In this document: positions 48,177 to 57,431 of the stretch, piece after piece
Layout of the letters: each line of letters starts with the position of its first letter
Position numbering within the stretch: position 1 is the first letter of the stretch
DNA from: Entomortierella parvispora E1425
Taxonomy: Eukaryota > Fungi > Mortierellomycota
Reading direction: 5' to 3'
DNA: 64,000 bases
NCBI GenBank assembly: GCA_020891255.1
Contig: BQFW01000006.1
Span: 1,240,001-1,304,000, forward strand
The notes under the pieces: model-generated
Seen by the model: only the letters and a program-made list of their open reading frames with translations
Database searches by the model: none
Told to the model about the DNA's origin: nothing
Made by a program: the position numbers and the translations under genes

Positions 48177-48185
48177 GGGAGTGTC
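48177..48185 (+). repeat. Left 9-bp target-site duplication GGGAGTGTC
   Basis: Identical to 57423-57431 and directly abuts the TIR. Confidence 0.95.
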
Positions 48186-48310
48186 GGACTAGACTATTTG
48201 TCGGCCCGTCCGACAATTCTTATTTGTCGGCTCATTGCTCTTATTTGTCGGCTGCTCCCCCTTATTTGTCGGCTGCTCCCGTATATGTCGGTCGCTTTAT
48301 TTAAGTTAAA
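48186..48310 (+). repeat. Left TIR with five TATTTGTCG-like subrepeats
   Basis: GGACTAGACTATTTGTCGGCCCGTCCGACAA... matches the reverse complement of the right end, GGAAGCGTCTATTTGTCGGCCCGTCCGACAA... Confidence 0.93.
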
Positions 48311-49354
48311 TTGAGCCCCACTTAACTACAAATATTCTAGAGAACAAAAGTTGAAAGTGTAGTTGGATAGAAGTTGGAATCAAAAAGAGGTTGATGTTAA
48401 ATAGCTGGACACGCGTACTGATCCAGTTACAAGGCCCTCAGAGAAGGGATCATCAGCTTTGGACGAATATGAAAAGACGTTTTCACTCTCGAACTAAGAA
48501 AAATCATGACAAGTACGGATGTGAGCGTGGCGAGATTTTGACAAGGTCATCGTATTTGCAGCTCTTTCGCTTGTTCATCATTTTAGCCAGTTGAAGCTCG
48601 GTTAGTACCAAAAAGAAGCATCTAAAAATGATGCAGTCTATCACTAAAAGAGACCTTTGGATTCTCAATACGGTATCTCTTGTAGGGAAGGTGTCTTCCT
48701 CATCATCTTTGTTTTCTTTGAACTGCTAAACTGCATTCTAGACGTTTGGGATTTGGGAAGCGAATTCTCATTTTCAAAGTACGCGAAGGCTGTTGAAAGC
48801 CATGCCATTGTCCTTCACTAATATCATATCCATTGACTACTGCCGTAGTATCTGCAATTGACCCAGAAGGCACACTTGTATGATGAACAAGGTGCAAAAC
48901 TACAGCCAAGGTTGTTTGGATCTGCCTCTAAGCCAACACTACCCTGGTGTAAAAGGGTGCAATGGGAGAAAGATAGGGGAAAGTTGTCTTTGTCACATAC
49001 TTCTTTCCTACTATTTCTTCGCTGCTGCTTCTGCTACATGGACACTGGTTCCATACGAGCAGGCGAGAAAACTTCAGGAAAACCCGGAAGAGAACCAAAA
49101 AAAAAAAAACAGAAACCATCTATTTGCGAATATGACCACGCCAGGTTCGAACGACAAAGAGAGAGGGCTCGACCTCGACGAGAGCGCCTTCGGAGCGGCT
49201 AGCCCGTCTTTCCCTCCTCATGGTCCAGGCACGGGGCGGCTCGGGGCCGCTGCACCACCAGGGCATCTTTCGACTATAGTCACGTGACCACGCGATGCAG
49301 CCCTCCAACACAACAATTGCTTCATTTTATTACGAATCCATCACTCACAACGAG

Positions 49355-50914
49355 ATGTCTCAAAAACGAAATCCATCCCCACAACCTGCTTCTGCGACGC
49401 TCTCGAGAGAACAGACTGTCCATCTGAAGCACTACCGGAATATATTTGAGGATCCTGAAGATGTCGATTCACTCCAGTCCGGTAGGGTTCTTTCAGTGGA
49501 AGACAGCATTCGGGAAGGTAATTAATTGAGTCAATTGAGATTCCTTTGCTCTCCTGGCATTTCACTGAACTACCCTTTTCCTCATTTAGCTGACCTCTCA
49601 ACTGAAATGCCTGCCACTGGGTCAAAGAGGTACTGTGGACTAAAAGCCCTTCCCAGTGGTGGAAACCAACGGAGGATATTCTTGGCCGTCCAATTCCTTG
49701 TTCAGCGACTCCAACAATTCTGTGCTAGTGCGCAGGATGAACTGAGAGGCATGAGTCTGACGAGAGGCGGCGAATTGTATACCCAGCTTTCTACAGAGCT
49801 AGAGCGTGCCGAGCCGAGTCTGAGAGGCGTTACAGCAGGTGCCCTATATTCGGCTGTTGGCAGACTCTGTGCTGACTACAACGCCTATGAGAAATTAGCC
49901 ACTTCCGCGACTGGGGTGGATCTCGCATTCTCAACTCGGTTGTTGGAGCTCTGTCGTCTTTTGCGCGATTACGACCGAACTTTATTAAGGATCAAGCAGG
50001 AAACATCGGAACTCACGGCGGAAGAGAGGGCGCGCGTGGCATCTCCCGCAACAGCAACCCGACAGAATCTTGTCACAGAGGATCGCAGACGGAGAATCAA
50101 GAAACTAAGATTTGATGATACTGTATCGCGCGGCAGTGAAGACGATGACAACGACGATGAGCCGGAAGACGAGGAAGAAGAGAATGAGGATGAGGATGGA
50201 CATTCAGCGGGCGAACAATATGATAGCGAAACACGAAGCTCCAATAGGGCCGACGTCACGCATGTTCGAGCTGCCCCAGGCGATACGAAAAGTCATCGTG
50301 GAGTTGCTTTGCCCATTCATCAGCAGCAACAAGAGCTACTCTACCCTCCAGCTACGTTGTCAGCCATGGTACCTTCGCCCAAACACCGCTCTGTGACACC
50401 ACCTCGGAGCACAAAAACAACAAAGACAATGCGGATGCCTCGGGGATTTGCGAAGGAGCAAAGGAGAATAGCGGACGAAGTGCAGTCAATAAGACAGGTC
50501 GTAGCGATTGAGACTACCGCTAGAATTAAGGAACTTAGAAGGAACATGACAGACAACACAACCATCATTGAAGATCTCGGCAGGAACACAGTATCCAAGA
50601 TCGACGATTTGAATAGGAGTATCGACGATTTGAATAGGAATATCGACGATTTGAATAGGAATACCGTTGCTGTCATTTCAGTGCTGTCGGATTTGAGGTC
50701 AGAAATGCATGGAACGTTTCTCACATTCAGAAATGAAATCCGTGATTTACAGGATATTGTATGGAAATCTTACTCAAGGACTTCTGGCCTACCTCAGCCT
50801 CAGCCTCACTCGACCTCCATACAATGGCCTCCAATGCTGGCGCGCCCTCAGACAACATTTCAACCCAGTATATCTCTGGCCACAGCCGCAGCACCACGGC
50901 GACCAGAAAGCTAG
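49355..50914 (+). CDS. Cargo protein: putative trihelix/Myb-SANT-like N-terminal region, acidic linker and coiled coil (Harbinger ORF1-like architecture), 2 exons
   Basis: A 72-nt intron (49518-49589) joins ORF 49295-49525 in frame to the 462-aa ORF. GALYSAVGRLCADYNAYEKLATSATG...LLELCRLLRDYD loosely resembles transposon-associated Myb/SANT-like proteins. It also has a D/E tract and IDDLNRx heptads. The start could be 49295. Confidence 0.6.
50600..50662 (+). repeat. 21-bp tandem repeat x3 encoding heptads IDDLNRS/IDDLNRN
   Basis: ATCGACGATTTGAATAGGA(G/A)T repeated three times. Confidence 0.92.
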
Positions 50915-50937
50915 CGACCATGCAGTGATACAATTTA

Positions 50938-51978
50938 TTACAATAAATCTTGACTTGGAAGGGATTCTGGCATCCACTGGTGTTTTGGAGTAAGGTAATT
51001 TTCAAGAGTTGGCGGATCCATCCCGAAATACGAGGTGACGCTGTTCCCTCTACGAATGCAAGTGAGAATATTGGCGAACAGAGCAGACACGATGTAGTAC
51101 TTAGTCTGTCTCATTTTCAGAATGTTACTATGGGCCAACCAGCTCCAGTTATTGTCAATGAAGTCAAATCCTTTGTCAGCACAAAGAAGGGGACGTCTCA
51201 TGGATAAGTTGAAGCGGATCTCGGACTTGCTGAGGACTGGACCGCGATATGGACGACAAACTTGAAAGCAATCAGGATAATTCCCATCACCATAAATGAC
51301 CATCGGAGCGCCAAGAGTGTTATGACAGTGGGCATTCAAAATGATTGGAAGACAAGACTTGGTCAAAGTGACCGTGTCAGCTTCTGCTCCCGGATGAGGA
51401 CCGCTCAAATGGGCAATTATACCATCTGGACAGCAAACCGACTGATATTTCATTGAGTGCATCTGTTTCTGGGTAGAATATGTCAGGTTTGGCCTTTCCT
51501 TAGGTCGGCAGATCTCAATATGAGTCCAGGAAACAAATCCCCAGCAGTTTGTCAGCCTCCCTTTCATAAACTGAACTCGCGCTGCTAAACCCTCCAGATA
51601 TTCATCTCGTAGGCGGGTGTGGTCAAACTCCAAAAGATGCTTCCATTCGGAAAGGATGTACTCGTTAATGGTCTTGATTGCGTGCGACACAAAAGGAGAA
51701 TCACGAGAAAAGAGAGCGGCCATATCCTTGATAAGATGAGGATAACTCAATCGAAAGCAAAGCATGCATAGCGCCTGCAGTCTTGGAACGATCGCTCCAT
51801 TTGACAACTTTAAGGTTATTGGAAGAGCCAAGGCATTGGCAACCTGGAGGAGCTCAGTCCAAGTGAACCGATACGTCTTTTCAGGGCAGAGAGCTAACCA
51901 GGGAGCATCAAAAGGGAGGTCGTAGGCCAATGCAACATGGCGGCTAAGCTCGGCAAAGAAAGGGTGATCCTCGTCCAT
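50938..51978 (-). CDS. PIF/Harbinger (DDE_Tnp_4, HARBI1-like) nuclease homolog, full length but with altered catalytic triad
   Basis: YRF...ALALP...ALCMLCFRLSYP (HTH region), NCWGFVSWT (family: NCWGFIDGT), MKYQSVCCPDGIIAHLSGP, IYGD..YP, FNLSM and YFGMDPPTLENYL. An upstream intron ends just before the ATG. Confidence 0.88.
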   Translation of the reverse strand: MDEDHPFFAELSRHVALAYDLPFDAPWLALCPEKTYRFTWTELLQVANALALPITLKLSNGAIVPRLQALCMLCFRLSYPHLIKDMAALFSRDSPFVSHAIKTINEYILSEWKHLLEFDHTRLRDEYLEGLAARVQFMKGRLTNCWGFVSWTHIEICRPKERPNLTYSTQKQMHSMKYQSVCCPDGIIAHLSGPHPGAEADTVTLTKSCLPIILNAHCHNTLGAPMVIYGDGNYPDCFQVCRPYRGPVLSKSEIRFNLSMRRPLLCADKGFDFIDNNWSWLAHSNILKMRQTKYYIVSALFANILTCIRRGNSVTSYFGMDPPTLENYLTPKHQWMPESLPSQDLL

Positions 51979-52438
51979 CTACTGTCCAATAAAAAAAAGG
52001 AAGTTAGAGCAATTGAGAGTGAGTTCCACGGACAAGAGGTGTACTTAACTCACCTGAAGATTCACAGTAATGGGGTTGATTGTAACTAAGTAAGGCAGGT
52101 GCAGATAATAGTAGTAGAAAAGACGAAAGTATGTGCCGTATTTATTGCTCAGCGGAATGTTTCTTTTTGGGCAAGAACTTGAACACGAGAAATAAATTCA
52201 AGAGTGAAGTGCGAAAGTAGGCACCTTCGACTCAAAAACGAGAAGAAGGTTCAGGGGCTCAGGGGTAATTTCTTGTGAGCACCGTGAGAATCGGCCAAAA
52301 ATCAGTACTTGACGTTTTTTTTTGTGGCAGCCGTTACGCGTTTAAGGCACTAAAAGGCCTTGCGGCCAACTGAACCTCCACCACCACCTCTTATCTCCCT
52401 TAACCACCAAATACCCTTTTGCTTGGAAACCTCACCTC

Positions 52439-55400
52439 ATGTCGCTCCCTGAAAGCCATGTTAACGGCTCGCTCGAGCTTCTCGACGACGCGGATCTTCT
52501 TGAATTCTGGTGGCAGAGACATCTCACGGGCTGGGAGTTAATCCATATGGAGTTCCCACCTGTCCTTACGAAAGTCACTCCCACGTTCTTCACCAACGAA
52601 GAGCGACTTGCGACCTACTTCGACGAGCTTCAAGTGACACTATCTGACCTGAGTATCAACAGGCCGATCCCTCACCCAGCATCAGTCGCGGCCGCGATAG
52701 AACTGATTAGTAACGATTCTCGACCGGGTGTCGTACTTATTGGCAAGGTGGGATTCGTCTCCTTTCCCGCCCTTCAGGCCATGAAGCAAATCCATGACCT
52801 AATGGATATGTCAGCTTTGCTTCGTGATATGTTGACTTGGTTAAATGGCCCTGTTAAGATCGGAGCGGAAGTCGTTCGGAAAATGAGGTCCATTCTTCTT
52901 CAGAGTCCCAACATTTTGGGGTGAGTTATACTGTACATCCATAATCCCTGGCCATGGCAGTTTGTTTTTAACACATCTAATCTGGCCGTTTTTATCCTTA
53001 GACACGGCTTTAAGGCTTACAATGGTACCGTCACCAGTATCACCGACCTCCTCCAGCTTAGGCACGAAGAGTGGCTGTCGGGACAAGTCATTGACGCGGT
53101 TATGAAAGAGTTTGCAGCTCAAACCAGCGGCGATGATATCTTCGTTCCTTCGACAGCCCTTCGTATTAATCTGAATGTCCATGAGCGGGAGCAACAAAAG
53201 AAGCAGTGGGACTACATCAAGACCGCCATCCTTCATTGCGCCATTGCCGAAAGGAAGGCATTTGCGATTGTCAACATTGGACGCCATTGGGCTCCTGTGG
53301 TCATCGACTTTGCCGCCAAACGAACGTCCTTCGGCCACTCGCTGGATGGGGGACAATCGGATAAATTAGGTGAGGAGGTTGGTCGCACCATTGCCAGGAT
53401 GTTGAAACATTGCATGGTGCCAGAATATACGGCATTCAAGAAAGTCCATGAATTGGAGGTACCCCAACAAGGCATCGATGGAGGCTCCTGTGGTGTCATT
53501 GCTCTTAATGTTATTGAGAGCGAGTGCCGGCCATTTCATCTCATAAAAGCCTGGACGGTGGCCACTAGCAAGAACCATCGGCTGTGGTATATGTATGTTC
53601 TGACCGGACAAGACTGGACGAACAAAGTACGTATATGTTGCCGTTGATCACTTTCTACTGAGTCCAATTACTTACATACTGTCCAATTGTCCTTGCAGGG
53701 CGTGTCTTCCTTGTTTATCGAGGACCCCACCCCTCCAGACCAGTCTCAACAGTCACCTTTTATCATCAGAAAATCTCACGGAATAACTCAGGTGACTCAC
53801 AATACCGCCATAAAAAGGCGCGATGAAAGAGTTGCCGACAGAGTTGTCAATATCGCTTCCGATATCCCGGTTGTTCAAGGGAAGGGCGGGGATCATGACA
53901 TCCCTGTTATTGAAGAGAAGGAGAAGGAGAAAAGAGAGGGAACCCCTGACATCCTTGATGCTCAGGATGGGGAAGACCTTTATATCTACTACGACCGATA
54001 TCTCCTCAGCGATAATCGCTTTCATTGTCCATCGGAGGATTATGATGACGACCTTGATGACAACGACCATGATTACGACGATCGGGATCTTGAGGGCAAT
54101 CTCTATTCCAACTATGAAAGCCCGTGTGGAGGGGAGGCTGATGCTCGTGAAGATGAGCGCGAACCCTGGTATGAAGAAGAATCCGATTGTGAGGACCACC
54201 AGGACTCCAAGAATTTCCAGGATACAGAACATGAAAGGGTTTTCGTTCCTATCGAGAAGGTTCGTTGCACAAAAAAAAAAAAAAAAAAAAAAAAAGAGGA
54301 GCTGTGTCTGATGTTGTTCTGCCATTTCTAGAATCCACACACTCCTTTGCCCGAGGAACTGGACTCTCAAATCTTCAATTCTTTCTCGGATGCCATAAAT
54401 GCCGTTCGACAGTGGTCCCTTTCGTGTGGATTTGATATTCGAATCGCCTCAAGCAAAAAAGCTATCACGCGAGTGGATGAGTACGTTTCCTTGCAATGCT
54501 GGCGTGTGCGAGGCAAGGCCGAACGACTAACGCAGTCCCTTTTTTACAGAGGTTCTAGAATGTACAAAAGGGAGGAAGCATAGTCCTAAGAAGACCTCTG
54601 TACCTGAGTTGGAAAGAAATAAGACCTCGATTCGCTGCGACTGCAAATGGTACATTCAACTCCGTGCAGCAAGCAAGGACGGGAAGGACTGTACCGTTTA
54701 TCGGAAGAACGACACTGCGGCTCACAACCACAAGATGATAGCTCACGCCGAGATATTTAGTCCCTCGAGACAGAGGTTAACAACACCCATGAGGGAATGT
54801 GCTCAAGAACTTTCAGCAGCAGGGGCGAGCATGCCTGTTATCAGGGAAGTTCTCAAGAGGCGAAACCCCGAGCGGTACTTCTCTGGGAGAAGAGTGTCGA
54901 ACGCAATGGCAAGACGAACTACCGGCTCTCACGGCGCGAACAACGCCCAGCGTCTGGTAGCAATGTTGACGGGTTTCCGCAAGAAGGATGAGCGATGGTA
55001 TGCTAAAGTTCAGACGGACAACAATTCGGTCATCAGACGCGTCTTTTGGATGGATCCACTCCAAAGGGATCTCTATTCACGATACCATGATGTAGTGATG
55101 AACGACACAACATACAACACCAACCGCTTCAAAATGCACCTCAACGTCACCACGATTGTCGATGCTGAGGGTGCAACCAGAGTTGTGGCATGCGCCCTTC
55201 TTAGCAAGGAGACAAGATCAGATTTTTTATTTGTTCTTTACCATTTATTCAAGGCGAACGGCAATCGGCATCCGCATGTGGTCGTTAGCGACGATGACAA
55301 GGCATTTGAGTCGGCGCTCATTAAGTTGTCCCCCAATACTCACATGGTAAACTGTCTGTGGCACTTTTCGAAGAATCTTTCGAACATCTCCTGCCAGGTC

Positions 55401-56802
55401 GGAAAGGAAGAGTACGAAAAGTTCAAAAACGGATTCTGGATTGCTCAGCGAACTATAACTCGGCGAAATTTTGAAGAAGAGTGGCAGAGAACTCTGGACT
55501 TTGCATTCCCTGATTTGGTCCCCGGGAGTCCACTTGACAAGAGGCTACAGTATATCTACAGTCGAAGCCCTTATTGGGCTAAGCCATGGGTGGGGACACT
55601 CCTCACGCTTGGGATACAGGCTTCACAGCGAGTTGAGAAAGCACACCATCTGATCAAACTCAAGGCGAACGGCAACACAGGCTTGGATGAACTCTTCCAA
55701 GTCATTCAAAAGAAGATCGCGGATGAGAGCATCCAAAATAGGTACCTCGCTTTCCTCGACGACTCCAAAGACGGTGTCAAGGAGAGGTATAAGGGATATG
55801 ATACCTTTCAAGCCGTCATATCGGAAAACGAGCGATTCCTAGGACGATTCGGTCAAAACAAGATGAAAGAGGAAATCTCCTCTTCTTTTTCTTATGAAGC
55901 AGAACTCCATGAGCACGATGAAGTAAGTAGAGTAAATGCTGGGGAACGGTCGCCTGTCAACTATAATCCATCTAACCTTTTTTTTTTTTTTGTAATGGCT
56001 GACCAAGTTGCGACGATATTTTAGGGACCCAGAGGACGAGGGGCAGATACGTCTATCTACTCGACAAGAAGTTCGCCTGTCGACATTGGGGGCCTTGCTA
56101 AGTGAACTGAGCGACTCGGAGATTGAGAGTATCCACCTTGTTTCTCATCTCGAAGAAAACGACGCATCGTGGGTTCTTCTCTTCAGGGATGGAGGATATC
56201 TGTGCACATGTCTCAAGTTGCAGAATGTGGGGATTGTGTGCAAACACTTTTTCTACATGATGCGGAGAGATCATGCCTTTAGATACCATATCCAACTGGT
56301 GCCCATGCGGTGGTTCCAAGAGCGCTGGCAAGACACCGAGAACCTCAATCTTTCGTCTCGGCCCTTCTTGTCTGTTTCTCCGGTTACAAGAGGACCCGAC
56401 CTTGCCTTCCTAGGTCCCCGACATCCTTCTCTGTCCGAAAAGCGCGTTCGGACTCCATGCTTGACGTATATGGAATCTGCTTCGAAGCTATTCCCCGAGT
56501 ACGGTGCTATCCCCGCTGTAGAACGAAGAGAGCAGGCTCGGCGAAGCCGCTTTGCTGAGTTGCAGGGCAATTCAAAGGAGTTGGTGCGAATGGGAGCAGA
56601 CCATCCAAAGCTGGCAGCTATTTACGCTAAAGCGATGAAAAAAGCCGAGGCACAGATGAAAAAAGTAATTGAAGAAATGACGGGCCTGCAGATCGTAAAA
56701 GACCCGATAGTTTTACCGCCCAAGGGGAAGGTCCCAACAAAAAGGATCAAGTCCAGCCAAGAATTATCCATGGCTTCCAAGAAGTCCAAAGGCAACTTCT
56801 AG
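52439..56802 (+). CDS. Predicted 1332-aa Ulp1-like protease / FAR1 / MULE DDE / SWIM fusion transposase (6 exons)
   Basis: Exons 52439-52920, 53002-53626, 53699-54259, 54332-54480, 54536-55922 and 56008-56802 total 3999 nt in one frame with GT-AG introns. Motifs: DLLQLRHEEWLSGQVID, GRHWAPVVID and QQGIDGGSCG (Ulp1); GFDIR...RCDCKW...HNH (FAR1); NDTTY, VSDDD, CLWHF and QRVEK (DDE); CTC-x9-CKH (SWIM). Confidence 0.82.
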
Positions 56803-57287
56803 ATATCTACATACAACGGCCTGCAGATAGTGTAGAATTAGAGCAGGAAAGAGGAGAATAAGAGGAGAATAATATCCCAATCTTGAGAGGTGGTAATGGA
56901 TAATTTTTGTAAAGCCCTGTTTTCCTAATAAAAGAACATAAACTTATATTAATAGTGTGGAGTATTACTGTCTTCATGCAGCGGACAATTGAAGGCAGCG
57001 GACAATTGTAGGAGAGATGATCATTGAAGCCATGTCTCCCAAAAAAAAAAAAAAAAAAAAAAGAAAAAAAAGTTGTGCTTTTTTGAGCTGCAGGCTTCAG
57101 AAAGGATGGATACCAGGAAAAGAGGGTGAGAGGACTTCAAAGAGCAGAATGGAGATGCCCCTACGACCGGAGTCTTCTTCGTGATATTTACAACTGAAGT
57201 AGGATGAAGGTCATGATCGTAGGGGAGAACGCAGGCTGCTTTGCCAGTTTCGTATTGTGGCGTCAAAGCGCTTGGGAATGCTAGTGT

Positions 57288-57422
57288 AGTTAACTTAAAA
57301 TCAGCGGCCGACAGATAGGGACATGGCCGACAAATAAGGGGGAACGGACGACAAATAAGAGCAATTGAGAGCAGGGACGACAAATAAGATCTTGTCGGAC
57401 GGGCCGACAAATAGACGCTTCC
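57288..57422 (-). repeat. Right TIR with five CGACAAATA-like subrepeats
   Basis: Reverse-complement match to 48186-48310. Confidence 0.93.
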
Positions 57423-57431
57423 GGGAGTGTC
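57423..57431 (+). repeat. Right 9-bp target-site duplication GGGAGTGTC
   Basis: Identical to 48177-48185. Confidence 0.95.

What the first reader, a model, noticed from the sequence alone, without database searches (positions are those of the whole stretch)
49355..51978. Harbinger-like two-gene module inside the MULE, with a full-length but apparently catalytically dead nuclease
Seen: a 346-aa uninterrupted ORF aligns end to end with DDE_Tnp_4 nucleases by motif. The first catalytic Asp motif (IDGT) reads VSWT, and the Glu motif (SVEW) reads CADK; only the YGD Asp is kept. The partner ORF converges with a 23-bp gap and has a trihelix-like/acidic/coiled-coil layout typical of Harbinger ORF1 (weak similarity). 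I found no Harbinger TIRs or TAA/TTA TSD around the pair. Inference: an open full-length ORF with lost catalytic residues suggests retention for a non-catalytic role, as in ALP1/HDP1.
Basis: partly seen in the sequence, partly recalled or inferred. Interest (0 to 1): 0.82.

Follow-up and report, generated by a model that had tools for sequence, protein, structure and literature searches.

The report
Dead Harbinger gene pair inside MULE
An active jumping gene (a Mutator-like element) in the soil fungus Entomortierella parvispora carries two genes taken from a different kind of jumping gene: a DNA-binding protein that is transcribed, and a cutting enzyme that has lost key catalytic residues yet still evolves under constraint.

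Summary
Window 50938-51978(-) is an intact 346-aa DDE_Tnp_4 (PIF/Harbinger) nuclease homologue. It has Ser where 29/29 relatives have the first catalytic Asp. It has Asp where the relatives aligned there have the catalytic Glu; only the second Asp is kept. Its convergent neighbour (49355-50914, one 72-nt intron, 23-bp gap) is the cognate Harbinger ORF1. TIR-bounded relatives carry homologues in the same tail-to-tail layout, and its N-domain models as a myb-type HTH (best match Sap1 DBD). No Harbinger TIRs flank the pair.

It sits in a real MULE with a 9-bp TSD, about six near-identical copies, and absence from two other strains.

New here:
- A diverged non-MULE copy shows both ORFs evolved under purifying selection (dN/dS 0.37 and 0.27) after at least six motif changes.
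- The nuclease lineage evolved about five times faster than its DDE-intact sister.
- The strain's RNA contigs show the partner spliced and abundant but no nuclease transcript.

The ALP1/HDP-like reading is partly supported. Retention under constraint is supported. A fixed host gene is not: this is transposon cargo, and its function is untested. The scan already noted other copies of this element in the same genome.

The parts
48177..48185 (.). Left copy of the 9-bp target-site duplication GGGAGTGTC of the host MULE (right copy at 57423-57431)
   Evidence: Read directly from the sequence. Homology among genomic copies starts at 48186 and ends at 57422.
48186..57422 (.). Host element: 9.2-kb Mutator-like element. 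TIRs lie at about 48186-48310 and 57290-57422 and carry TTATTTGTCGGC sub-repeats.
   Evidence: Inverted repeats I13, I23 and I24. Pfam MULE E 3.6e-19 at 54609-56021. Copies L004 and L005 are 99.87% identical over the full length. DNA word depth is about 455-480 against 77 in the flank, which suggests about 6 copies.
49279..49288 (+). GTCACGTGAC palindrome 76 nt upstream of the partner ATG; candidate promoter element
   Evidence: It occurs once in the 64-kb window. It is also present about 70-90 nt upstream of the ATG of both partner paralogues in L002, within otherwise unalignable upstream DNA.
49355..49517 (+). Partner (Harbinger ORF1-type) exon 1, 54 codons plus 1 nt
   Evidence: The motif IFEDPEDVDSLQSGRVL is conserved in relatives L008, P0156 and P0158. 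The splice is confirmed by an RNA contig.
49518..49589 (+). 72-nt GT..AG intron
   Evidence: An X2 RNA contig skips exactly 72 nt with GT..AG ends. The intron diverges 22% from the L002 copy against 7-8% for the exons, and carries a 4-nt indel.
49590..50914 (+). Partner exon 2 (the whole protein is 495 aa): myb-type N-domain, acidic tract, C-terminal coiled coil, P/Q-rich tail
   Evidence: Homologous to the convergent ORFs of TIR-bounded Harbinger relatives L008-L011 (phmmer E 7e-39 to 1e-8). dN/dS against L002 is 0.37.
49667..50005 (+). Predicted four-helix myb-type HTH DNA-binding domain (exon-2 residues 27-139)
   Evidence: AF2 on alignment A4 gives core pLDDT of about 85-93. VIA-align's best PDB match is the Sap1 DBD 6ext at Z 9.8, with 105 of 105 residues aligned; the next row is 6.7. 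Also matched: NgTRF 2qhb at 5.7, Zeste 5cqq at 5.3, GT-1 2jmw at 5.2. Sap1 is described as a myb-type HTH plus a long alpha4 helix plus a coiled coil (PMC6053445).
50597..50666 (+). Three 21-nt tandem repeats encoding IDDLNRN heptads in the C-terminal coiled coil
   Evidence: Direct repeat family D8; translation.
50915..50937 (.). 23-bp spacer between the convergent stop codons
   Evidence: Relatives have 12-42 nt spacers.
50938..51978 (-). 346-aa DDE_Tnp_4 nuclease-like ORF with an S150/D231/D268 triad
   Evidence: The ORF shows no stop or indel in L003, L004 or L005: L004 and L005 are identical to the window here, and L003 has two substitutions whose coding effect was not checked. It is not annotated by NCBI in any of the four loci fetched, L002-L005.
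51529..51531 (-). Codon 150: Ser in place of the first catalytic Asp
   Evidence: A1 column: 29 of 29 others have Asp. The DNA contig agrees.
51286..51288 (-). Codon 231: the retained second catalytic Asp (YGD)
   Evidence: Invariant column in A1. It is lost (Asn) in the L002 relic.
51175..51177 (-). Codon 268: Asp in place of the catalytic Glu
   Evidence: Near-invariant Glu column in A1, at least 90%. The change is shared with the L002 relic, so it predates the split of the two copies.

Best explanation
The pair is a former PIF/Harbinger transposon. It consists of an ORF1 myb-type DNA-binding protein and an ORF2 DDE nuclease, arranged tail to tail. It has lost its own terminal repeats and now travels as internal cargo of an active Mutator-like element in Entomortierella parvispora E1425.

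The partner is a working, transcribed gene. Its predicted product has a Sap1-like myb-type HTH, an acidic linker and a dimerising coiled coil.

The nuclease-like protein has lost its first catalytic Asp and several neighbouring motif residues, so it most likely cannot cut DNA. It nevertheless still models as a complete RNase H-like fold. It evolved under purifying selection after at least six of those changes. This points to a non-catalytic role.

Inferred, not shown: it acts as the binding partner of the myb-like protein, as Harbinger ORF2 does for ORF1. The beneficiary would be the transposon lineage that carries the pair rather than the host.

Shown: identity, anatomy, residue losses, copy number, selection signals, and partner expression and splicing.

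Inferred: loss of catalysis, interaction between the two proteins, and any benefit to the MULE.
For: - Pfam DDE_Tnp_4.
- S150, A200 and D268 stand against near-invariant D, H and E; 9 of 40 conserved columns are broken.
- The fold model has pLDDT 90.4, with the three positions on beta1, after beta4 and on the helix.
- Relatives L008-L011 are TIR-bounded 3.1-3.8 kb Harbingers. Each has a DDE-intact nuclease convergent with a partner homologue.
- The host element is a MULE with a 9-bp TSD and about six copies. Read depth is flat across the pair, so every copy carries it.
- Comparison with the diverged copy L002: partner exons diverge 7-8% with only in-frame indels, against 22% for the intron; dN/dS is 0.37 (CI 0.26-0.54).
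- The nuclease half (162 codons) has dN/dS 0.27 (CI 0.15-0.48). The L002 nuclease picked up 7 frameshifting deletions in 561 nt, while the window ORF has none in 1038 nt.
- Polarised changes: 5 derived in the window, at variable sites, against 12 in L002, which include invariant Y229, D231, N257 and M260.
- P163, T169, A200, loss of R264, A267 and D268 are shared with the relic, so they predate the split.
- A spliced partner RNA contig has depth 147.
- In the rice element Ping, mutating one DDE residue drastically reduces transposition, as quoted in PMC4671723.
Against: - No nuclease k-mers appear in the strain's RNA contigs: depth is 0 over 51046-53400, against 147 for the partner.
- AUGUSTUS/NCBI calls no gene there in the four other loci examined.
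- At L002 the nuclease decayed while the partner stayed intact and transcribed, so the partner does not need it in cis.
- The window lineage evolved about five times faster than sister P0001 (branch 0.84 against 0.16; relative-rate count 31 against 10, chi2 10.8). This could be plain relaxation of constraint.
- D150S cannot be dated, because L002 lacks that half. The measured selection may therefore predate the decisive loss, or predate capture by the MULE.
- The MULE copies differ by only about 0.13%, so intactness among them says nothing.
- Nothing links the pair to MULE function.
Confidence: 0.5

Rival explanations
1. Only the myb-like partner is functional. The nuclease ORF is a hitchhiking relic that recently escaped selection and stays open simply because too little time has passed.
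For: No RNA contig and no gene call for the nuclease. It decays at L002 where the partner persists and is transcribed. Stand-alone partner paralogues exist without a nuclease: L088, and L002 6263-7450. Protein evolution is five-fold faster, and catalytic and motif residues are lost.
Against: dN/dS is 0.27, with an upper CI of 0.48, after six motif changes. The window branch kept every invariant residue that the relic lost. There are zero frameshifts in 1038 nt, against 7 in 561 nt of the relic over the same time. The fold model is confident and complete.
Confidence: 0.3
2. The pair is a host-domesticated gene pair in the sense of ALP1, HDP1/HDP2 or HARBI1/NAIF1. It would serve the fungus in chromatin regulation and lie in a MULE only by accident.
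For: Same origin, same degenerate triad, no TIRs, and purifying selection. The HDP1 and ALP1 precedents are in PMC5339849 and PMC4671723.
Against: All of the roughly six copies lie inside a mobile element with a TSD. Two other strains under the same species label, whose flanks are 90-97% identical, show no contig at 85% likeness or more to the pair. One strain's contig stops matching exactly at the MULE boundary. No syntenic single-copy orthologue is known.
Confidence: 0.07
3. The nuclease is still catalytically active with a non-canonical S/D/D centre, or with a substitute acidic residue. It would mobilise unseen non-autonomous Harbinger-type elements elsewhere in the genome.
For: D231 is kept, Glu to Asp at 268 is conservative, the fold is intact and the ORF is under constraint.
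Against: The first metal-binding Asp is Ser, and the adjacent Gly is Trp. Several further near-invariant motif residues are changed. Single DDE mutations cripple Ping, as quoted. There are no cognate TIRs around the pair and no transcript.
Confidence: 0.05

Closest known systems
Autonomous PIF/Harbinger transposons (two-ORF: Myb/SANT-like ORF1 plus DDE_Tnp_4 ORF2)
   Same: Both proteins are homologous to those of TIR-bounded relatives from soil and other metagenomes (L008-L011). The layout is the same: convergent, with a 12-42 nt spacer, and a conserved intron after the first partner exon.
   Different: No TIRs or 3-bp TSD. The triad is S/D/D instead of D/D/E. The pair is embedded in another transposon.
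Arabidopsis HDP1/HDP2 and ALP1 (Harbinger-derived host proteins; PMC5339849, PMC4671723)
   Same: A nuclease-derived protein with an incomplete DDE triad is kept under selection. In the HDP case it was co-retained with the Myb/trihelix-type partner.
   Different: Those are fixed, single-locus host genes conserved across plants, with shown chromatin roles. Here the pair is multi-copy transposon cargo, polymorphic between strains, with no functional data and no detected nuclease transcript.
Accessory ORFs of Mutator-like elements (maize mudrB; Arabidopsis VANDAL VANB/VANC anti-silencing proteins, PMC5735166; ULP-carrying MULEs)
   Same: Extra genes are carried between MULE TIRs in every copy. 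This MULE also has a weak Peptidase_C48 (Ulp1-like) match at 53102-53644 (E 0.0017).
   Different: The extra genes here come from a different DNA-transposon superfamily. No anti-silencing or transposition role has been tested.
Schizosaccharomyces pombe Sap1 DNA-binding domain (PDB 6ext/5jdk; PMC6053445)
   Same: It is the best structural match to the partner's N-domain (Z 9.8, all 105 residues). The architecture is the same: a myb-type three-helix HTH, a long fourth helix, then a coiled coil.
   Different: No detectable sequence similarity: profile search against PDB gave E above 0.3 and Foldseek gave E 0.9. Sap1 is an essential host replication-fork and switching factor, not transposon-encoded.

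Membership tests
PIF/Harbinger transposase (DDE_Tnp_4) | Significant match to the DDE_Tnp_4 / RNase H-like nuclease domain | tested here: met
   Pfam E 9.6e-14, above the gathering score. 2799 homologues at E of 0.001 or better. AF2 pLDDT 90.4; the best PDB rows are DDE transposases and integrases.
PIF/Harbinger transposase (DDE_Tnp_4) | Intact D-D-E catalytic triad | tested here: not met
   S150 / D231 / D268. The nearest relative P0001 and the other 28 aligned homologues keep the first two Asp; the Glu column is near-invariant, at least 90%.
Autonomous Harbinger element | Terminal inverted repeats and a 3-bp TSD flanking the two ORFs | tested here: not met
   The best flanking inverted repeat scores 11, which 17 of 100 shuffles reach. 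No match in the correct orientation to the relatives' TIR core.
Autonomous Harbinger element | Second ORF encoding a Myb/SANT/trihelix-type DNA-binding protein | tested here: met
   The partner is homologous to the second ORFs of TIR-bounded relatives. It is modelled as a myb-type HTH: Sap1 Z 9.8, and also NgTRF, Zeste and GT-1. There is no Pfam Myb hit by sequence and the classic Trp triad is absent, so the fold assignment rests on a predicted model.
Host-domesticated Harbinger genes (ALP1, HDP1/HDP2, HARBI1/NAIF1) | Immobile, fixed locus with orthologues across strains or species | tested here: not met
   About six copies inside a TSD-flanked MULE. Absent at 85% likeness or more from two other strains' contigs.
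Host-domesticated Harbinger genes (ALP1, HDP1/HDP2, HARBI1/NAIF1) | Purifying selection on the coding sequence after loss of mobility or catalysis | tested here: met
   dN/dS is 0.37 for the partner and 0.27 for the nuclease half against the L002 copy. Indels are in-frame only. Caveat: D150S itself cannot be dated.
Host-domesticated Harbinger genes (ALP1, HDP1/HDP2, HARBI1/NAIF1) | Both proteins expressed and physically interacting | tested here: inconclusive
   The partner mRNA is spliced and abundant. No nuclease contig appears in the single RNA run, and contigs cannot prove absence. The interaction is not testable here.
MULE accessory gene (mudrB / VANC type) | Located between the MULE TIRs in all copies of the family | tested here: met
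   Full-length copies L004 and L005, and L003, carry it. DNA depth is flat across the TIR, the pair and the next gene.
MULE accessory gene (mudrB / VANC type) | Contributes to transposition or counter-silencing of its own element | not testable with these tools
   Needs genetics or biochemistry.

The most novel reading that the evidence does not exclude
Transposon-to-transposon domestication. The Mutator-like element would have co-opted a Harbinger's myb-type DNA-binding protein and its now catalytically dead nuclease as an accessory module. That module might target, protect or de-silence the element, together with its Ulp1-like protease. Selection on the pair would then act through the MULE's own propagation rather than through host fitness.
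Probability: 0.3. Interest if true: 0.75.

Novelty: new variant of a known kind. Interest (0 to 1): 0.55.

Why it matters
Dead Harbinger nucleases paired with Myb-like partners are known as host genes in plants and vertebrates. Here the same outcome appears inside another, currently active transposon of an early-diverging fungus. A diverged second locus serves as a built-in control for selection. If the MULE uses the pair, domestication of transposase genes is not only a host strategy but also happens between competing mobile elements. The system would also be tractable, because the strain is culturable and has DNA and RNA data. Separately, the partner's close structural resemblance to S. pombe Sap1 raises the testable idea that Sap1-type factors descend from Harbinger ORF1 proteins.

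Tried and rejected
- Pfam on the partner, whole and as ten family members: no Myb family at E up to 10.
- Profile search of the partner against PDB sequences: nothing meaningful.
- Foldseek of the partner model against PDB, Swiss-Prot AFDB and the ESM Atlas: no significant hit. Only VIA-align gave a standout, Sap1.
- Atlas feature search: only sub-threshold Myb/MADF leads at 0.83-0.87.
- Exact-protein look-up of the nuclease: not on record, because it is unannotated.
- RNA-run search: none was listed. The run labelled 'DNA?' (X2) turned out to behave as the project's RNA-seq library.
- The candidate TIR pair 48608/52157 (14 nt) was rejected as chance. So were 10-mer matches to the relatives' TIR core, which lie in the wrong orientation.
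- The frameshift (+A after 50421) that truncates the partner in assembly copies L003-L005 was rejected as a probable Nanopore homopolymer error. A full-depth DNA contig and the RNA contig both show the window's version. The window itself has a comparable T-run error at 52315.
- Genome contigs was not scanned because it holds only prokaryotes.
- dS between the window and L001 is near saturation (pS 0.69), so the deep dN/dS of about 0.19 is only indicative.
Full report
**What is there**

The window comes from Entomortierella parvispora E1425. The partner protein matches NCBI proteins EMPS_08304 and EMPS_03913 of assembly GCA_020891255.1.

ORF listing confirms a 346-aa uninterrupted ORF at 50938-51978(-). 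A long plus-strand ORF ends at 50914, which leaves a 23-bp gap.

The minus-strand protein matches Pfam DDE_Tnp_4 (E 9.6e-14). An exhaustive HMMER search finds 2799 homologues.

I aligned it with its 29 best full-length relatives (A1). The findings by position are:
- Position 150 is Ser; all 29 others have Asp.
- D231 is invariant.
- Position 268 is Asp; the relatives aligned there have Glu (a near-invariant column).
- The near-invariant His of the 'HD' motif is Ala.

Overall the window protein departs at 9 of 40 columns that are at least 90% conserved: R82L, D150S, G151W, Q163P, G169T, H200A, R264L, V267A, E268D. That is more than any other sequence, which depart at 0-5.

An AF2 model built on this alignment is confident (pLDDT 90.4, pTM 0.90). 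It places residue 150 in beta1, residue 231 just after beta4, and residue 268 on the following long helix. These are the canonical RNase H-fold catalytic positions. The best, though weak, PDB matches are DDE transposases and retroviral integrases.

One nuance applies: Glu to Asp at 268 is conservative, and D150S is the decisive loss.

**The partner**

Exon 1 (49355-49517) joins exon 2 (49590-50914) across a 72-nt GT..AG intron, giving a 495-aa protein. NCBI's model of the paralogue uses the same splice. An RNA contig skips exactly these 72 nt.

Sequence searches give no Pfam family. The protein is nonetheless clearly the cognate Harbinger ORF1:
- Metagenome contigs L008-L011 carry DDE-intact nucleases 35-44% identical to the window's.
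- Each of these is convergent with a homologue of the partner (phmmer E 7e-39 to 1e-8).
- The exon-1 motif is seen again in L008 and in the partner homologues P0156 and P0158.
- In each contig an inverted-repeat pair 3.1-3.8 kb apart flanks the two ORFs.

The contigs of P0002 and P0003 also show convergent genes, with gaps of 12 and 29 nt.

I modelled the N-domain with AF2 on a 10-sequence family alignment; the core pLDDT is about 85-93. The model is a four-helix unit. Its best PDB match by VIA-align is the S. pombe Sap1 DNA-binding domain (Z 9.8, 105 of 105 residues; the next row scores 6.7). NgTRF, Zeste and the GT-1 trihelix domain appear lower in the list.

The Sap1 structure paper describes that domain as a myb-type HTH with a long fourth helix, followed by a coiled coil (PMC6053445). 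The partner has the same layout: N-domain, acidic tract, then a coiled coil with three IDDLNRN heptad repeats.

Foldseek searches were not significant, so the fold call rests on one aligner and a predicted model.

**Context**

The pair lies in a genuine MULE:
- Long TIRs with sub-repeats.
- A MULE transposase domain (E 3.6e-19).
- A weak Ulp1-like match.
- A 9-bp TSD, GGGAGTGTC.
- Full-length copies 99.87% identical at other loci, L004 and L005. L003 carries an LTR-retrotransposon insertion.

In contigs of the strain's DNA reads, word depth is 77 in the flank. It is a flat 450-480 or so across the TIR, the pair and the next gene. That indicates about six copies, all carrying the pair.

Two other strains under the same species label have the flanking gene at 90-97% identity. 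They have nothing at 85% likeness or more to the pair. One contig stops matching exactly at the element boundary.

No inverted repeat better than chance flanks the pair. It is therefore internal cargo without its own ends.

**Selection**

A second, non-MULE locus (L002, EMPS_03913) holds a diverged copy. It covers window 49355-51498 only. The comparison gives the following:
- Partner exons differ by 7-8%, with three indels, all multiples of three.
- The intron differs by 22% and has a 4-nt indel.
- The nuclease half differs by 12.4%. It has seven frameshifting deletions and is truncated at residue 161.
- NG86 dN/dS is 0.37 (bootstrap CI 0.26-0.54) for the partner.
- NG86 dN/dS is 0.27 (CI 0.15-0.48) for 162 nuclease codons.

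I polarised the amino-acid differences with outgroups. Five changes are derived in the window, all at variable sites. Twelve are derived in the relic, including invariant Y229, D231, N257 and M260.

The relic shares P163, T169, A200, loss of R264, A267 and D268. These motif changes therefore predate the split, and constraint continued after them.

The window lineage has also evolved much faster than its DDE-intact sister P0001. The terminal branches are 0.84 and 0.16. Derived changes at conserved sites number 31 and 10 (chi2 10.8). Rough omega rises from about 0.06 to about 0.3 (dS is near saturation).

The picture is partial relaxation with loss of catalytic constraint, while constraint on the fold remains.

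Three caveats apply:
- D150S cannot be dated, because the relic lacks that region.
- The time of capture by the MULE is unknown.
- The lower dS of the partner (0.16 against 0.32) may reflect gene conversion.

**Expression**

The genome paper reports Nanopore, HiSeq DNA and HiSeq RNA libraries from one mycelial culture (PMC8759367). Run X2, from the same sample, behaves as the RNA library.

A 1402-nt contig at depth 147 covers 49423-50895 with the intron removed and no differences from the window. A second contig carries exactly the 24 differences expected of the L002 paralogue, at depth 17.

No X2 contig covers 51046-53400. The nuclease, and the next MULE gene, are thus at least far less expressed than the partner in vegetative mycelium. 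Contigs cannot prove absence.

NCBI annotates no gene at the nuclease in any of the four loci fetched, L002-L005.

The apparent frameshift that truncates the partner in three assembly copies (+A after 50421) is not seen in full-depth DNA contigs or in the RNA contigs. It is probably a homopolymer error in the Nanopore-based assembly; repeats may have polished poorly (my inference). The window itself has such an error at 52315.

**Reading**

The best-supported explanation is this. A Harbinger lost its ends and its nuclease's catalytic centre and now rides in an active MULE. The myb-type partner is a functioning, transcribed gene. The nuclease-like ORF has been kept by selection for something other than cutting, most plausibly as the partner's binding subunit. 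That last step is inferred.

The main rival is that the nuclease is now a silent hitchhiker.

A host-domestication reading in the ALP1/HDP sense fails the test of a fixed locus. Continued catalysis is unlikely.

Earlier notes of this scan describe other copies of the same element in this genome. One follow-up (s1-190100) reached a similar 'kept but cannot cut' conclusion. That is not independent evidence.
- The L002 control locus.
- The relative-rate and polarity tests.
- The RNA result that only the partner is visibly expressed.

Noticed in passing
window 49667-50005; PDB 6ext: The Harbinger ORF1 N-domain models onto the whole Sap1 DNA-binding domain (Z 9.8). It shares Sap1's DBD-then-coiled-coil architecture. 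The Sap1 paper reports no sequence homologues, so Sap1 may itself descend from a Harbinger ORF1-type protein.
   Followed up: partly
L002 6263-7450(-), L002 10001-11543(+), L088 8001-9421(+): E. parvispora has a small family of partner-type genes outside MULEs. EMPS_03913 is 86% identical, intact and transcribed. An adjacent divergent paralogue is 28% identical in the N-domain. EMPS_02567 is 52-65% identical, lies between a PRP21-like gene and a chitin synthase gene, and has no nuclease nearby.
   Followed up: partly
window 49279-49288; L002 9932 and 7542: A GTCACGTGAC palindrome sits 70-90 nt upstream of the ATG of three partner-family genes. It occurs only once in the 64-kb window. It is a candidate shared promoter element of the CACGTG type.
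   Followed up: partly
window 48917-49074: A segment of about 155 bp inside the MULE, upstream of the partner, has roughly 2.6 times the element's DNA word depth (1250 against about 475). Loose ends lie at both borders, and diverged versions appear in RNA contigs. It is a separate repeat or a captured fragment of unknown identity.
   Followed up: no
window 52315; L003/L004/L005 position equivalent to window 50421: Single-base homopolymer differences between assembly copies are contradicted by read contigs. These are assembly errors in repeats. One of them truncates NCBI's EMPS_08304 model to 361 aa.
   Followed up: yes
L003 14968-20036: One MULE copy is interrupted by a retrotransposon of about 5 kb (RVT_1, RNase H and integrase domains) at the equivalent of window position about 54321.
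   Followed up: no
L002 12610-13203(+): A 197-aa ORF just beyond the truncated nuclease relic contains a Cys/His-rich stretch that resembles an HNH-type motif. It has no Pfam hit at E of 0.01 or better.
   Followed up: partly
window 48185/48186 boundary: A contig of another strain (run X5, flank about 96.6% identical) matches up to 48185 and then runs on for about 1.2 kb of unlike sequence. This is consistent with an empty insertion site. The right flank could not be checked within the 6-kb limit.
   Followed up: partly
window 53102-53644(+): The MULE also carries a weak Ulp1/Peptidase_C48-like ORF (E 0.0017, below Pfam's cutoff). No RNA contig is visible over 52031-53400.
   Followed up: partly
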